A stretch of 63,316 bases of DNA, filler included, from Octopus bimaculoides (lineage: Eukaryota): the NCBI RefSeq assembly GCF_001194135.2. It is 6 parts of 6 records of this genome, joined end to end, with 100 filler letters (N's around TTAATTAATTAA, not from the genome) between each part and the next. Parts side by side here need not be neighbours in the genome. Positions count along the whole stretch, not along the records: positions 29,882 to 49,155 come from NW_026306484.1; 5 more parts are not named here. The stretch is one strand, 5' to 3'. This document shows, one piece after another, positions 33,265 to 36,341 of the stretch. The position numbers and the translations under genes were made by a program. The notes beneath the pieces were generated by a model, which saw only the letters and a program-made list of their open reading frames with translations, did not search any database and was not told the origin of the DNA. The first letter of the stretch is position 1. Every line of letters starts with the position of its first letter.

Positions 33265-33513
33265 AAAAAGTTGTGTTTGGAGGAAGTGCTACCCTCTCTA
33301 TAAGCATTCCAAACATGATGAGACCTGTGGTGTGGCGATGTGAAAACTATAAATATGAATGTGAATGGACATGCGCTAACGGCAGAGATTATAAAGTTAC
33401 GCAGAGTGGAGATACTTCGACTCTTTGGATCCGAAGAGTAACTGAGAGATGTTTGCATTGGAAATTTGAAGACGACAACTTGAATATTGGATTTATTAAG
33501 TTGCAGCTAAACA
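33265..33513 (+). CDS. Exon encoding atypical Ig-like domain 1 (phase 1-1, 249 nt)
   Basis: Acceptor TTTCTTTATTTCAG|AA, donor AACA|GTAAGG; open frame EKVVFGGSATLSISIPNMMRPVVWRCENYKYECEWTCANGRDYKVTQSGDTSTLWIRRVTERCLHWKFEDDNLNIGFIKLQLN; gapless paralogue of the 36093 exon. Confidence 0.85.
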
Positions 33514-33530
33514 GTAAGGAAATGATTTAC

Positions 33531-33583
<53 letters not shown>

Positions 33584-33857
33584 TTTCCAATTTTGTCACA
33601 AGGACAGCAATTTTGGGGGAGGGGATGAGTTGATTACGTTGACCCCAGTGTTCAACTGGTACTTATTTTGTGGTGGTGGTGGTATCGTTCACTTGATAAC
33701 AATGGCACTCCTCTTTTTTTTTTAAGCTTCTGTGTACCTTCTGGAGGAGTTACCTCAATCCTATAAAATATAACCAAAAATGAAGTAGATTGACAAGTTT
33801 ATTTTTTGAGCCTGTGGAAGGCACACTTGATAACAATGGCACACTTCTTTTGTTTGC

Positions 33858-33892
<35 letters not shown>

Positions 33893-33893
<1 letters not shown>

Positions 33894-34037
33894 CATTCCA
33901 TTAGTTATAGGTGCACGAGGAAGTTTCCCTTAAGATTTGAACAGATGGATAGAGGAAATAAACCCAGTTTAGTAGAGCTTCAGAAAACAGTGTTATTAGG
34001 GACAGCTAGGATACTTAGGAGGGTTCTTGGCATCTAC
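33893..34037 (+). mobile_element. R4/Dong-like element, extreme 3' ORF fragment
   Basis: IPLVIGARG...RWIEEI / ELQKTVLLGTARILRRVLGI, the conserved C-terminus; starts directly after (TAA)n at 33858-33890. Confidence 0.8.
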
Positions 34038-34039
34038 AT

Positions 34040-34470
34040 TCACTCGTTGTAGGCCGATGTTAGGAATTTTTCTCTTCCAACAGTCTAATCTGGTGCACAT
34101 GTACACTTACATACGCAAATCAACAGAGAGGGAGTAGAGTTTTTACAGACATTTCCATAGCGAGCAGAAAATCCAAAGTTTTAGACATTCCTTCTTCGGG
34201 GAAAAGTTGGCAAAACTAAAATGAAAAGAAATACAGCAGAGTTTTACATCTCTAAGCCAGACAAAAACTGGCTGTTTTTAATTTCACTCTTGTCGACTTC
34301 CTCCTGTAGAAGGACTCTCTCTGAAAAGTTGGATTTTCTACTTTCCATGACAATTTCTCCGTACTCTTTCCATTCAATAGAGTCTTGCCAACACAGACCC
34401 TTACCAATTTCTTTAGAGTCTGTGAAGGCATTCAACCACATGTTCAACATCTTCACTCAATCTGCCACTT
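34040..34470 (-). mobile_element. Probable degraded retroelement coding remnant, family uncertain
   Basis: Broken frame ...FLLAMEMSVKTLLPLC*FAYVS...RPTTSECRC recalls the C-terminal region of some invertebrate non-LTR ORFs; recalled similarity only. Confidence 0.3.
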
Positions 34471-34602
34471 TATATGATATGTAATTATATTGACATGTGT
34501 TAATTAATATTTTTATTTAAATATTGTAATTTAAACAGTAATGAATCCTGTTGATCAAAGGTAAAATCTGGAAATCAAATATTCTGTTTCCATCTTTTTC
34601 AG

Positions 34603-34641
34603 ATTTGACAATTGCAGAAAATTATAAAATTTTCCAAAATG
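34603..34641 (+). CDS. 39-nt phase 1-1 linker exon between the two Ig-like exons
   Basis: Strong acceptor CTGTTTCCATCTTTTTCAG|AT and donor AATG|GTAAAT; joins in frame as ...LQLN-NLTIAENYKIFQN-GPAVLGG, creating an NLT sequon. Confidence 0.65.
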
Positions 34642-35054
34642 GTAAATGGATTTTCAAACCTTTTTCTCCTTTTAAACTAAACACTGTCTTTTCTGTTGTA
34701 TTCCTCTCGGGAGACTCGCAGAGAAAAGACGAGTTGTACAATTTAATTATTACATTTATTATTCAATTACATACAAAGAACGCACTCACCCAATGTTCGT
34801 TGTAAATAAACAAGAATCATGTCCGCCATATATATATCAATGACATTTTACTACGACAGTCACACAAGACAACAACAATGAAACAATGAACTCAGACGAA
34901 CCACAGTGACACACGAGACATCAGACGAATAACAAATCTAACAGTCCATATAACATTTTCGATTCTCTTTCCTATTTTTTCTCTTTCTCTCATAGTTTTT
35001 TCTTACTCTGTTTTTTAAAAACTTTTTCCAATCCGCTCGATTTCATTTTAAGGA

Positions 35055-35470
35055 GCACCAACCACGACCATCACCATTTAATGACCTCCTTCCATTCTGC
35101 CATCACTTGGACAATTATAAAGGATCCAACAAGCTGCAGGACTGTGTCAAGCGCCAATGTTTGCTTTGGCATGGTTTCTATGGCTGATTATCTTCCATAA
35201 CGCCAACCATTTCACAGAGTGTACAGGATGCATTTTCTCATCGCTCCTGCAACTAGGACTATGACAGCCATAATAATTGTGATTATGGTTATAATAGCTT
35301 CCACATTCCATGCTGGCATAAGTTGGATGTTTTGACAGGATACCACAAGTCCCAGGACCATGTCAGGCTTCAGCGTCTCCTTTGGAATGGTTTCTGCGTC
35401 TCAATGCCCTTCCTTACACCAGTTTAGAGAGAGAGTGCCATATGATATTTTCATGGCATCACCACTGATG
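35055..35470 (-). mobile_element. Two decayed RTE-tail SINE/LINE 3' fragments
   Basis: Both show GCTTTGGCATGGTTTCT(A/G)...CCCTTCC...ACGCCAACCA...ACAGAG-type motifs, complementary to the tail near 22520. Confidence 0.6.
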
Positions 35471-36092
35471 AAGTTATCAAGTAACTGGAAGGACAAAAGG
35501 AAAAAGAAAAATATCCCTTGAAGGAAGAGAGTAGGAGAGAGGGGGTGGCTTTATATCAGGTGTGTTGAAAGGCTAAAGTATGACAGAGAGAGACAAGAGC
35601 ACAGGTGTAAAAGGTAGATGGGAGTGGCTAGGAAGAAGACAAAAATGGTAGTGACAGGTGTGAGCAGAAGAGAAGATATGGACAATAGATCAGGGGAAGG
35701 GAAAAAGGGAGGGGGTAGTGTGATGAGAGAGGTGAATACAGTGAGAGATGAACAAGGATGGAGGTGCAGTTGATGAGTGGGGAGGGGCAATGGTGAGAGA
35801 GAGAGAGAGAGAGGGTAGGGGGATGATGTAGATGTAGAGGGGGGTACATAAGGGTGGCTCTGAGAGGGTGTTGAGAATCACAGCAAATGCTTGAGGAGTT
35901 AGGATGAAGTGTGGCTGAGGAGAGAGAAGGCACAGAGGGGATGCGATCAGAAAAAGTTGTTCTGGCAGGGGGTGGCGGTGGGCGAGTGGTAATTTTGCTT
36001 CCAAATGAATTCAGCCATATGTATTGATGATGATGATGATGATGAAAATCCCTGAAAGAAATCAATGATATTGATTTATCTATTTACTTTAG

Positions 36093-36341
36093 GACCAGCT
36101 GTGCTTGGAGGGAATATTACCCTTCATATCGAAGTGCCAAATATGGCAAGAATTATTGTCTGGAGAAACAAGTATTATAACCTCGAATGTGACTGGACTT
36201 GTGACAGGAATGGCAAGCATGAAGTTAGCCATACTGAGAACGTTTCATCTCTTTCAATTAAAAATATCACTGGAAAAGATTTATCTTGGACCTTTTGTGA
36301 CAGAAACCATTGCTCTCCAGAATTTACTTTGGAGATTAAAG
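36093..36341 (+). CDS. Exon encoding atypical Ig-like domain 2 (phase 1-1, 249 nt)
   Basis: Acceptor TATTTACTTTAG|GA, donor AAAG|GTAAGG; GPAVLGGNITLHIEVPNMARIIVWRNKYYNLECDWTCDRNGKHEVSHTENVSSLSIKNITGKDLSWTFCDRNHCSPEFTLEIK; three N-glycosylation sequons; 30/83 identical to exon 1. Confidence 0.85.

What the first reader, a model, noticed from the sequence alone, without database searches (positions are those of the whole stretch)
33265..36341. Spliced receptor-like gene with two atypical Ig-like domains lacking the canonical disulfide
Seen: two exons of exactly 249 nt, both phase 1-1 with AG/GTAAGG boundaries, aligning without gaps at 30/83 identity, plus a phase 1-1 39-nt exon between them that keeps the frame. 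Established: phase 1-1 symmetric exons and the pattern GG.(A/I)TL / V.W / S.L.I..(V/I)T..D / L-end are typical of Ig-superfamily ectodomains. Unusual: the B-strand and F-strand cysteines are replaced (TL.I, W.F), while both domains conserve E-C-x-W-T-C and each has two further cysteines at non-shared positions (C26/C63 vs C69/C74). Inference: a lineage-specific cell-surface receptor family whose Ig-like fold is stapled by a different disulfide. I do not recognise it as a named family.
Basis: partly seen in the sequence, partly recalled or inferred. Interest (0 to 1): 0.85.

Follow-up and report, generated by a model that had tools for sequence, protein, structure and literature searches.

The report
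Octopus Ig-like surface protein gene
This stretch of Octopus bimaculoides DNA holds three real exons coding for two immunoglobulin-like domains of an unnamed, octopus-expanded family of small cell-surface glycoproteins whose Ig fold has lost the usual core disulfide and carries other cysteine pairs instead: a tidy new branch of a very well known protein superfamily, not a new kind of thing.

Summary
Exons 33265-33513 (249 nt), 34603-34641 (39 nt) and 36093-36341 (249 nt) are all phase 1-1 with AG|...|GT borders. The two 82-aa products align without gaps at 37% identity (tblastn E about 5e-17).

The window is Octopus bimaculoides. RefSeq's 'uncharacterized LOC106871836' uses exactly these junctions, but the model is truncated at both ends.

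Both domains are predicted as Ig beta-sandwiches (AlphaFold2 pLDDT 80.6 and 94.3). All 50 top Foldseek PDB hits for each are Ig domains (titin, obscurin, MyBP-C, IgLON, antibody VL). Ile12 and Phe67 sit where the canonical cysteines would be, and Trp23 is kept.

Across 50 family domains, Cys32-x3-Cys36 is nearly invariant. Cys25/Cys62 mark membrane-distal domains and Cys68/Cys73 mark membrane-proximal ones, and each pair comes and goes together.

Paralogues in O. sinensis, O. vulgaris and Argonauta have a signal peptide, 1-4 such domains, a TM helix and a short tail. The closest outside relative is a Haliotis family that passes Pfam's I-set threshold.

One family member appears as a spliced cDNA contig in an octopus meta-transcriptome.

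In this copy no signal-peptide exon was found, and assembly gaps flank the locus. TM/tail exons lie downstream as a four-copy tandem array.

Verdict: a new, unnamed variant of the Ig superfamily, of moderate interest.

The parts
33265..33513 (+). 249-nt phase 1-1 exon coding for Ig-like domain 1 (type A, membrane-distal type; Cys25, 32, 36, 62), strands A' to G
   Evidence: Reading and translation. Part of RefSeq model P0001. AF2 pLDDT 80.6 and Foldseek hits to I-set Ig domains. Acceptor and donor are identical to paralogous exons.
34603..34641 (+). 39-nt phase 1-1 mini-exon (D)LTIAENYKIFQN(G). It is a linker and, by inference, the A strand of the following Ig domain. It is homologous to the mini-exon that ends the signal-peptide region in paralogues.
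   Evidence: the profile of paralogue N-termini hits only this exon. (five 39-nt mini-exons in three loci share ttttcatcttttacag| and |gtaaat). (L003 exon 2, LTGTQHYKIIQS).
36093..36341 (+). 249-nt phase 1-1 exon coding for Ig-like domain 2 (type B, membrane-proximal type; Cys32, 36, 68, 73; three N-x-S/T sequons at the family's conserved positions 7, 49, 57)
   Evidence: AF2 pLDDT 94.3 and pTM 0.83. Foldseek hits to Ig V/I-set domains. The 40 nt of intron after it are identical to those after domain 3 of LOC106867739.
33514..34602 (+). Intron 1. It starts GTAAGGAAAT, then (AAT)n and an interspersed repeat.
   Evidence: It is collinear with the L003 intron at 70-76% identity.
34642..36092 (+). 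Intron 2. It starts GTAAAT and contains a purine-rich low-complexity stretch at about 35480-36000.
38095..38237 (+). Candidate terminal exon. It is the only AG acceptor downstream of domain 2 that is in phase 1 and reads through a TM helix: VLISILGLLVILFIAFSV-KFEWRPYVWIKTRVIEWQSQEEYKNLPEA, stop at 38235-38237. Not verified by RNA.
   Evidence: systematic scan of acceptors. The tail resembles the C-termini of paralogues P0015 and P0010.
37870..38678 (+). Tandem array of four copies (start-to-start spacing 187-242 bp, 69-92% identical) of a TM-plus-cytoplasmic-tail exon. The first copy abuts the assembly gap 37352-37869.
32979..33235 (.). Interspersed repeat (SINE-like) that replaces the sequence where paralogues have the upstream mini-exon region. 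Homology to paralogues resumes about 30 nt before the domain-1 acceptor.
   Evidence: Other copies lie at 46616-46826 and 47592-47845.

Best explanation
The locus is (part of) a gene of an unnamed family of small type I membrane glycoproteins. The family belongs to the immunoglobulin superfamily and is expanded in octopods.

Exon structure. Each ectodomain module is written on two phase-1 exons. A 39-nt mini-exon codes for the linker and, by inference, strand A. A 249-nt exon codes for strands A' to G. Because every border is phase 1, modules can be duplicated or skipped without breaking the frame. Predicted isoforms of paralogues carry 1 to 4 modules.

Fold. The fold is I-set-like. The usual Cys(B)-Cys(F) pin is replaced by Ile12 and Phe67 packing on the invariant Trp23 (shown by alignment and model).

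Disulfides (inferred). Stability comes from peripheral disulfides.
- Cys32-x3-Cys36, at the end of strand C' and the start of the C'-D loop, is present in nearly all domains.
- Cys25 (end of C) pairs with Cys62 (E-F turn, the position of the canonical Asp) in membrane-distal 'type A' domains such as domain 1.
- Cys68 pairs with Cys73 within the F-G hairpin in membrane-proximal 'type B' domains such as domain 2.

Function (inferred). The protein is most likely a cell-surface recognition or adhesion molecule. It would bind through the conserved C'/GFCC' face and has a short, non-enzymatic tail.

Origin of this copy (shown). The window copy arose by segmental duplication of the 3' two modules of a gene like LOC106867739.
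For: Exons and junctions:
- The exons read as described, and the junctions equal those of RefSeq model P0001.
- Exon sizes and splice sites are identical in 7 domain exons and 5 mini-exons of 3 loci.
- A family member appears as a continuous signal-peptide/mini-exon/domain/TM ORF on a 1067-nt contig (L004). The contig comes from an octopus meta-transcriptome, SRR3401912, so the same phase-1 junction is spliced in vivo (PMC11662614).

Fold:
- AF2 gives pLDDT 80.6 and pTM 0.71 for domain 1, and 94.3 and 0.83 for domain 2.
- Foldseek's top 50 for each are all Ig domains, with TM up to 0.73.
- Pfam I-set is the most frequent weak hit, in 6 of 24 domains. It scores 23.6 bits for a 4-domain paralogue against a cutoff of 23.7, and 56.8 bits for the Haliotis relative.

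Core positions and cysteine logic:
- W23 and W65 are invariant. Position 12 is Ile in 34 of 50 domains and position 67 is Phe in 42 of 50.
- C32 and C36 are both present in 48 of 50 domains.
- C25 and C62: both present in 23, one only in 2+2, neither in 23.
- C68 and C73: both present in 8, one only in 1+3, neither in 38.
- Seven domains have only C32 and C36.
- Position 62 is either Cys or the canonical Asp.

Topology: paralogues have an N-terminal hydrophobic signal, a TM helix and a short tail. Sequons are conserved at positions 7, 49 and 57.

Duplication: window 33231-36457 is collinear with L003 8600-11104, introns included.

Selection: dN/dS is 0.17-0.57 against older paralogues.
Against: - No RNA evidence exists for this particular locus.
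- No signal-peptide exon or upstream mini-exon was found between the neighbouring gene and 33265. Much of that interval is an assembly gap.
- Only one of the four TM-exon copies has an in-phase acceptor.
- The disulfide pairing is inferred from co-occurrence in related, non-independent sequences. Model coordinates could not be inspected.
- The Foldseek E-values are modest (2-3e-3; none at or below 1e-3).
- The window's own domains fall below Pfam's I-set threshold (16 bits).
- Function, ligand and tissue are unknown.
Confidence: 0.8

Rival explanations
1. The window copy is a dead or partial duplicate. It would be a segmental copy of only the last two Ig modules of a LOC106867739-like gene, without promoter, signal-peptide exon or a properly joined TM exon. 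It would be transcribed weakly or not at all, while the family itself is functional.
For: - Collinearity with L003 starts only inside the intron upstream of that gene's second module.
- An interspersed repeat sits where the upstream mini-exon should be.
- No signal-peptide exon was found by a profile of 17 paralogue N-termini.
- The RefSeq model starts at an internal Met and runs into the intron.
- Three of the four TM-exon copies lack an in-phase acceptor.
- The scaffold is an unplaced 149-kb piece.
Against: - Both 249-nt exons and the mini-exon are open, and all six splice sites are intact and identical to functional paralogues.
- dN/dS is 0.26-0.49 rather than about 1.
- Gaps of 1670 N just upstream and of 76 and 518 N downstream could hide the missing exons.
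- One in-phase TM exon exists.
Confidence: 0.3
2. The conserved Cys32-x3-Cys36 pair is not a structural disulfide. It would instead be a functional site: metal-binding, redox-active, or forming intermolecular disulfides that link the receptors into covalent dimers.
For: - The motif and the C' strand before it (N-Y-K-Y-E-C) form the most conserved element of the domain, although C' is normally a variable edge strand.
- The motif is also kept in the distant Haliotis relatives.
Against: - Seven domains have these two cysteines and no others. For an extracellular glycoprotein this fits an internal pair best.
- No His, Asp or Cys cluster typical of a metal site is conserved nearby.
Confidence: 0.1
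3. The product is secreted rather than membrane-anchored. Domain 2 would be spliced to a downstream acceptor in a frame that stops before the TM segment.
For: - The best-looking acceptor of TM copy 2 (..accag|AATACTC, before 38095) is out of phase and would give a stop after a few codons (reading; one search lists the only in-phase alternative).
- The RefSeq model has no TM.
Against: - Type B domains are followed by a TM helix in paralogues whose models run through to a C-terminal exon (P0009/P0041, P0015, P0028).
- Four TM/tail exon copies lie directly downstream on the same strand.
Confidence: 0.1
4. The domains are not Ig-superfamily at all. They would be another beta-sandwich (fibronectin III, cadherin-like) or a transposon-derived protein.
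For: No Pfam family passes threshold on the window's domains.
Against: - All 50 top Foldseek hits for each domain are Ig domains.
- The only recurrent weak Pfam hits are I-set, Ig_3 and ig.
- Trp23, the L-x-I...V-x-x-x-D/C-x-x-W-x-F pattern and the phase-1 exon borders are Ig hallmarks.
- No transposase or other mobile-element family matches the two domains in Pfam. The piggyBac-like fragment in the piece is 8.5 kb away.
Confidence: 0.03

Closest known systems
I-set immunoglobulin domains (Pfam PF07679; titin, obscurin, MyBP-C, twitchin, IgLON/neurotrimin, NCAM)
   Same: - Predicted fold and strand order (A', B, C, C', D, E, F, G; no C'').
- Best Foldseek matches, with TM up to 0.73.
- Invariant C-strand Trp.
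- The Y-x-V-T...S-T-L-x-I-x-x-V-x-x-x-D motif aligns with titin.
- Many muscle I-set domains also lack the core disulfide (my own knowledge).
   Different: - The window's domains score below Pfam's threshold (16 bits against 23.7).
- The domains are extracellular, glycosylated and cysteine-stapled, whereas titin-type domains are cytoplasmic.
- Trp replaces the 'tyrosine corner' Tyr, and one residue of D-x-G is deleted.
- A conserved C-x3-C follows strand C'.
CD2/SLAM-family N-terminal Ig domains (CD2, CD58, 2B4/CD244) and CEACAM N-domains
   Same: - Small type I surface glycoproteins.
- The membrane-distal Ig domain lacks the canonical B-F disulfide.
- 2B4 is stapled by a non-canonical A-G disulfide instead (PMC12506779).
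- The genes lie in tandem clusters and evolve fast; they act in adhesion and recognition through the GFCC' face (my own knowledge).
   Different: - No detectable sequence relationship (CD2 1hnf has E 0.27).
- The cysteine positions differ (C'-D loop, C/E-F, F-G).
- Here both domains of the protein lack the core disulfide, whereas CD2-family membrane-proximal domains keep theirs.
- No ITSM-type tail motifs were seen.
Haliotis 'uncharacterized / mucin-like' Ig-TM proteins (e.g. H. rufescens LOC124119024, P0031)
   Same: - Apart from two hits judged spurious (P0034, P0037), the only non-octopod hit of the octopus profile among 1.84 billion representatives (E 8.5e-12 over five repeats).
- Shares W(C strand), T-C-N-P-S-C where the octopus has E-C-D-R-T-C, G-Y-x-A-T, S-T-L-T-I, T-W-x-I-x-D-x-N, and absence of the B and F cysteines.
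- Repeats followed by a TM helix; clustered on one contig.
   Different: - The link is weak (hhalign P 1.8e-4, probability 49%).
- It keeps the canonical Asp.
- It has an extra Cys before strand A and another in strand G (a likely A-G staple).
- It is often joined to long Ser/Thr-rich mucin-like stalks.
- It passes Pfam I-set (56.8 bits).
Sponge SAML/RTK Ig domains with a disulfide inside the F-G ('CDR3') loop (PMC11926128)
   Same: A Cys pair within the F-G hairpin (Cys252-Cys258 there) parallels Cys68-x4-Cys73 of the type B domain.
   Different: The sponge domains keep the canonical Cys-Cys-Trp triad, and no sequence relationship was tested or is expected.

Membership tests
Immunoglobulin superfamily, I-set type domain | Two-sheet Greek-key beta-sandwich (ABED / A'GFCC') of about 90-100 residues | tested here: met
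   AF2 models of both 82-aa exon products have strands at 8-13, 21-25, 28-32, 42-47, 50-55, 64-68 and 77-80. pLDDT is 80.6 and 94.3. All 50 top PDB matches for each are Ig domains, with TM 0.56-0.73. Strand A is inferred to lie on the 39-nt exon and was not modelled.
Immunoglobulin superfamily, I-set type domain | Sequence match to the curated profile (Pfam PF07679) above its gathering score | tested here: not met
   The window's two-domain product scores 16.0 bits (E 0.013) against a cutoff of 23.7. Paralogues P0008 and P0041 score 23.6 and 21.6 bits. Only the Haliotis relative passes, with 56.8 bits.
Immunoglobulin superfamily, I-set type domain | Canonical Cys(B strand)-Trp(C strand)-Cys(F strand) triad | tested here: not met
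   The Trp is present (W23, 49 of 50 domains). The B-strand position is Ile (34/50) and the F-strand position is Phe (42/50). No family domain has Cys at either position. Many accepted Ig domains also lack this pair, so it does not exclude membership.
Immunoglobulin superfamily, I-set type domain | E-F turn and F-strand motif D-x-G-x-Y-x-C ('tyrosine corner') | tested here: inconclusive
   Position 62 is Asp in 16 of 50 domains (including window domain 2) and Cys in 25 of 50. One residue is missing relative to titin and Haliotis. Trp65 replaces Tyr and Phe67 replaces Cys.
Immunoglobulin superfamily, I-set type domain | Domain encoded by symmetrical phase 1-1 exon(s) | tested here: met
   The 249-nt and 39-nt exons are all phase 1-1 in the window, L002 and L003.
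Type I single-pass membrane receptor (architecture of the octopod family) | N-terminal signal peptide, ectodomain, one TM helix, cytoplasmic tail | tested here: inconclusive
   Met in paralogues P0002, P0008, P0013, P0041, P0052 and the cDNA-derived P0019. In the window, four TM/tail exon copies exist and one is in phase. No signal-peptide exon was found, and assembly gaps intervene.
CD2/SLAM family | Detectable homology to CD2/SLAM V-C2 ectodomains and tyrosine switch motifs (ITSM) in the tail | tested here: not met
   CD2 (1hnf) appears only at E 0.27 in the profile search of PDB sequences. The tails read show no T-x-Y-x-x-V/I motif. The resemblance is functional and architectural only.

The most novel reading that the evidence does not exclude
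The family could be an octopod-specific diversified recognition system. It would consist of tandem clusters of genes built from interchangeable phase-1 Ig cassettes and, as here, arrays of alternative TM/tail exons. These would be spliced combinatorially to give many surface isoforms used for neuronal, sucker/epithelial or haemocyte self/non-self recognition. That would be a cephalopod counterpart of CEACAM/SLAM-type or Dscam-like diversification, built on an Ig scaffold with its own disulfide framework.
Probability: 0.15. Interest if true: 0.7.

Novelty: new variant of a known kind. Interest (0 to 1): 0.4.

Why it matters
Cephalopod genomes are known for lineage-specific expansions such as protocadherins, C2H2 zinc fingers and GPCRs. 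My literature searches found no description of an expanded Ig-superfamily surface-receptor family in octopods.

This family gives a defined sequence signature: W23, E-C-x-x-T-C, W65-x-F67-x-D69, and two cysteine sub-types. It also gives an exon grammar (39 + 249 nt, all phase 1). With both, the family can be annotated properly. At present about ten public models start at a spurious internal Met or run into introns.

The family is also a natural example of an extracellular Ig fold that has lost its core disulfide and appears to be held by peripheral ones. That is useful for thinking about Ig-fold stability.

If expression proves restricted to neurons, suckers or haemocytes, it would become a candidate recognition system in an animal group where few are known.

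Tried and rejected
- Signal-peptide exon. I searched with a regular expression and with an HMM of 17 paralogue N-termini over window 23315-49155, both strands. Only the 39-nt exon itself was found. tblastn with paralogue N- and C-termini gave only noise.
- Upstream mini-exon. Aligning the region upstream of domain 1 with L003 showed an interspersed repeat instead.
- More domain copies. A search of the piece found none beyond the two.
- PDB sequence searches with the octopus profile and the wider profile gave nothing significant. The best hit was titin at E 0.0037, and CD79b and CD2 had E >= 0.1.
- The word-indexed protein search with the 24-domain profile returned only two octopus proteins. 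It added nothing to the exhaustive search.
- Two hits of that exhaustive search were judged spurious from their sequences: P0034 looks bacterial with Ig-like repeats, and P0037 looks FLYWCH-like.
- The look-up of encoding contigs had no record for P0002, P0003, P0015 or P0052.
- Literature. No paper mentions LOC106871836 or five related LOC numbers. General searches on cephalopod IgSF found no description of this family.
- The transposon-protein and FN3 readings were rejected (see rivals).
- Cys-Cys distances in the AF2 models could not be measured, because coordinates are not returned.
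Full report
**Origin and observation**

The piece 29882-49155 is identical over its 16,507-base overlap to Octopus bimaculoides scaffold LGKD02011600.1, read as L001.

- 33265-33513 is 249 nt.
- 34603-34641 is 39 nt.
- 36093-36341 is 249 nt.

Each follows a pyrimidine tract and AG. The two long exons are followed by GTAAGG and the short one by GTAAAT. 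In phase 1 all three are open and join to one reading frame.

The two 82-aa products align without gaps at 30/82 identity. They find each other at E about 5e-17 in the 19-kb piece, where nothing else scores below E 0.3.

RefSeq protein P0001 ('uncharacterized protein LOC106871836') contains exactly these junctions. However, it begins at an internal Met (MMRP, in the B-C loop of domain 1) and ends by reading into the intron after domain 2 (...EIKGKEITSANNNNNNSF). It is therefore a truncated model.

**The exon grammar is conserved**

I compared a paralogue on chromosome CM046629.1 (LOC106867739, L003) and an O. vulgaris locus (L002).
- Every domain exon is exactly 249 nt, with acceptor ..ctgatttctttatttcag| and donor |gtaaggaaat.
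- Every linker exon is exactly 39 nt, with acceptor ttttcatcttttacag| and donor |gtaaat.
- In total that is seven domain exons and five mini-exons.

In L003 the first mini-exon (LTGTQHYKIIQS) is the second half of the signal-peptide region. The 39-nt exon is thus a regular module that precedes every domain exon.

Window 33231-36457 is collinear with L003 8600-11104 at 70-76% identity, introns included. That stretch of L003 holds its second module, a mini-exon and its third, membrane-proximal module. The 40 nt of intron after window domain 2 and after L003 domain 3 are identical. The window locus is therefore a segmental duplicate of the 3' part of such a gene.

**RNA evidence**

There is none for this locus. 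One family member, P0019, has signal peptide, mini-exon, type A domain and TM. It sits as one uninterrupted 138-codon ORF on a 1067-nt Logan contig of run SRR3401912. A paper describes that run as an octopus meta-transcriptome (PMC11662614).

In the genome these parts are separated by introns of hundreds of bases, so this contig is spliced cDNA. It shows the same phase-1 mini-exon/domain junction (...MANG|PVVLG...).

**Fold**

- AlphaFold2 on domain 1 with nine homologues gave pLDDT 80.6 and pTM 0.71.
- Domain 2 with 25 homologues gave pLDDT 94.3 and pTM 0.83.
- Both models are all-beta, with strands at about 8-13, 21-25, 28-32, 42-47, 50-55, 64-68 and 77-80.
- The 50 best Foldseek matches for each in the PDB are all immunoglobulin domains. 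They include obscurin, titin, MyBP-C, twitchin, neurotrimin/IgLON, NCAM2, CD79b and antibody VL, with TM 0.56-0.73 and probability 1.00. The E-values are only 2-3e-3.

At sequence level the window's domains do not reach any Pfam threshold; I-set scores 16 bits (E 0.013) against a cutoff of 23.7. I-set is nevertheless the most frequent weak hit across the family, in 6 of 24 domains. A four-domain paralogue scores 23.6 bits and the Haliotis relative 56.8 bits.

The targets are 90-100 residues long and the model starts at strand A'. I therefore infer that the 13 residues of the mini-exon (x-x-Y-x-I-x-Q-x-G) form strand A, so that one Ig domain is split over two exons.

**Cysteine framework**

I collected 50 distinct full-length domains from 40-odd proteins and aligned them to the family profile.

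Conserved core positions:
- W23 (C strand) is present in 49 of 50, as is W65.
- F67 is present in 42 of 50, I12 in 34 of 50, L10 in 38 of 50 and D69 in 47 of 50.
- T9-L10-x-I12 corresponds to the usual T-L-x-C of strand B.
- Alignments with titin and with the Haliotis domains put W65 at the 'tyrosine corner' position and F67 at the canonical F-strand Cys, with one residue of D-x-G deleted.

Cysteine pairs:
- C32 and C36 are both present in 48 of 50 domains, and seven domains have no other cysteine. This is most simply explained by a local C32-C36 bond.
- C25 and C62: both present in 23 domains, one alone in 2+2, neither in 23.
- C68 and C73: both present in 8 domains, one alone in 1+3, neither in 38.
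- Where C62 is absent, the position is usually the canonical Asp.

C25 ends strand C and C62 precedes strand F. These lie next to each other in the antiparallel C-F pairing. C68 and C73 bracket the start of the F-G hairpin.

These pairings are inferences. The sequences are related, so the contingency tables overstate independence, and I could not read distances from the models.

There are two domain types.
- 'Type A' has cysteines 25, 32, 36 and 62. Window domain 1 is of this type.
- 'Type B' has cysteines 32, 36, 68 and 73. Window domain 2 is of this type.
- Wherever the paralogue model continues past a type B domain into a C-terminal exon (P0009/P0041, P0015, P0028), that domain is the last one before the TM helix.

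**Family and range**

An exhaustive HMM search of 1.84 billion representatives gave 32 hits. Two are spurious by inspection: P0034 and P0037.

Of the 20 cluster representatives I looked up, one is from Haliotis rufescens and two are unnamed Logan contigs. One of those two is from the octopus run above. The remaining 17 are 'uncharacterized' or 'hypothetical' proteins of O. bimaculoides, O. sinensis, O. vulgaris or Argonauta hians. No squid, cuttlefish or Nautilus protein appeared. Coverage of those genomes in the library is unknown to me.

Many O. sinensis loci lie on one 21.3-Mb record and several O. bimaculoides loci lie on CM046629.1, which indicates tandem clusters.

Complete models read as follows: signal peptide, then 1-4 [mini-exon + domain] modules, then a short stalk, a TM helix and a short tail. 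One O. sinensis gene, LOC115225115, has predicted isoforms that use different subsets of at least five domain cassettes.

A sub-branch (P0017, P0020, P0022, P0033, P0035, P0036) has one such domain carrying only C32 and C36, followed by other cysteine-containing modules.

The Haliotis protein P0031 has five repeats and a TM helix. It shares the W, the C-x3-C (T-C-N-P-S-C), G-Y-x-A-T, S-T-L-T-I, T-W-x-I-x-D-x-N and the absence of the B and F cysteines. It keeps the canonical Asp and has a Cys before strand A and another in strand G. It belongs to a sizeable Haliotis family, often joined to mucin-like stalks. Profile-profile comparison of the octopus and Haliotis domains gives P 1.8e-4 and probability 49%. 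This is a plausible but unproven specific relationship.

**Selection**

Nei-Gojobori estimates on the 82 codons give dN/dS of 0.17-0.57 between the window's exons and older paralogues, where dS is near saturation. Two young O. vulgaris cassettes give 0.86 (dS 0.13). The exons are under purifying selection overall, and recent duplicates diverge fast. The samples are small.

**Ends of the gene**

Upstream of 33265 no signal-peptide exon and no mini-exon were found. Homology to paralogues stops about 30 nt before the acceptor. There an interspersed repeat lies (32979-33235) that also occurs at 46616-46826 and 47592-47845. A 1670-N gap ends just before the piece, at window 28212-29881 as seen in L001.

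Downstream, after gaps at 36558-36633 and 37352-37869, there are four tandem copies of a TM-plus-tail exon (37870-38678; spacing 187-242 bp; 69-92% identical). An example reads ...ISAIVLISILGLLVILFIAFSVKFEWRPYVWIKTRVIEWQSQEEYKNLPEA*. These resemble the C-termini of paralogues P0015 and P0010.

A scan of all AG acceptors after domain 2 found one that is in phase 1 and reads through a TM helix, at 38095 with its stop at 38235-38237. Whether it is used is unknown. Another paralogue model (P0017) strings three TM-like segments together, so duplicated TM exons recur in the family.

**Comparison with what is known**

The domain works like, and by fold belongs to, the I-set branch of the Ig superfamily. 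By the strict Pfam criterion the window's sequence is not a member. [quoted passage not shown]

Precedents exist for each oddity.
- Cytoplasmic I-set domains and the N-terminal domains of CD2-family and CEACAM proteins lack the core disulfide (my own knowledge).
- 2B4/CD244 is tethered by a non-canonical A-G disulfide (PMC12506779).
- A sponge Ig domain has a disulfide inside its F-G loop (PMC11926128).

What I did not find described is this combination in an octopod-expanded family: C-x3-C after strand C', plus either 25-62 or 68-73, with both domains of the protein lacking the core pair. No paper mentions the loci.

**Verdict**

The feature is a real, spliced Ig-superfamily gene segment of an unnamed octopod family with a non-canonical cysteine framework.

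It is a new variant of a very familiar kind, not a new kind. Whether this particular copy is intact is uncertain; I put the chance that it is a partial duplicate at about 0.3. Interest is moderate, 0.4.

Noticed in passing
window 37870-38678 (+): There are four tandem copies of a TM-helix-plus-cytoplasmic-tail exon (spacing 187-242 bp, 69-92% identical), each ending in its own stop. The first abuts an assembly gap. They may be alternative 3' exons or decaying duplicates. Paralogue model P0017 likewise contains three TM-like segments in a row.
   Followed up: partly
window 33514-33620 and 36342-36400; also L002 and L003: The introns after the domain exons begin with nearly the same sequence in paralogues and species: GTAAGGAAAT.. 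then (AAT)n and an interspersed repeat. Several public gene models (P0001, P0026, P0030, P0032, P0023) read through into them, giving false C-termini such as GKEITSANNNNNNSF or KWIYKPFPPFKLNTVFS.
   Followed up: partly
protein models P0001, P0012, P0015, P0021, P0023, P0029, P0042, P0046, P0049, P0051: About ten public models of the family start at the conserved Met17 of the P-N-M-K/R-R-P motif inside the Ig domain. This is a systematic annotation artefact caused by the missed small 5' exons.
   Followed up: partly
window 44894-45118 (+): An ORF fragment matches the piggyBac-type transposase family DDE_Tnp_1_7 (24.5 bits, cutoff 22.4). It is a decayed transposon copy downstream of the gene.
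   Followed up: partly
window 40494-40710, 41326-41545, 42890-42983: There are three copies of a 94-220-nt repeat (77-83% identical) spaced 0.8-1.4 kb apart. Minus-strand ORFs over them have no family match. Their nature is unknown.
   Followed up: no
window 30900-31800: A long low-complexity array with strongly negative GC skew (about -0.48) produces spurious 150-220-aa ORFs on both strands (RDRVRV..., LGIGLG..., NPIPNP...).
   Followed up: no
L001 3389-4447 (window about 26703-27761, outside the piece): The upstream neighbour on the same strand is a small gene whose product matches Pfam Galaxin_repeat. It bounds the interval in which a signal-peptide exon of the Ig gene could lie.
   Followed up: no
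L002 10001-44204 (O. vulgaris OX597842.1): Public model P0007 fuses a histone H2B-like N-terminus (Pfam Histone) to the Ig family member across a 34-kb span. This is probably a chimeric gene model.
   Followed up: no
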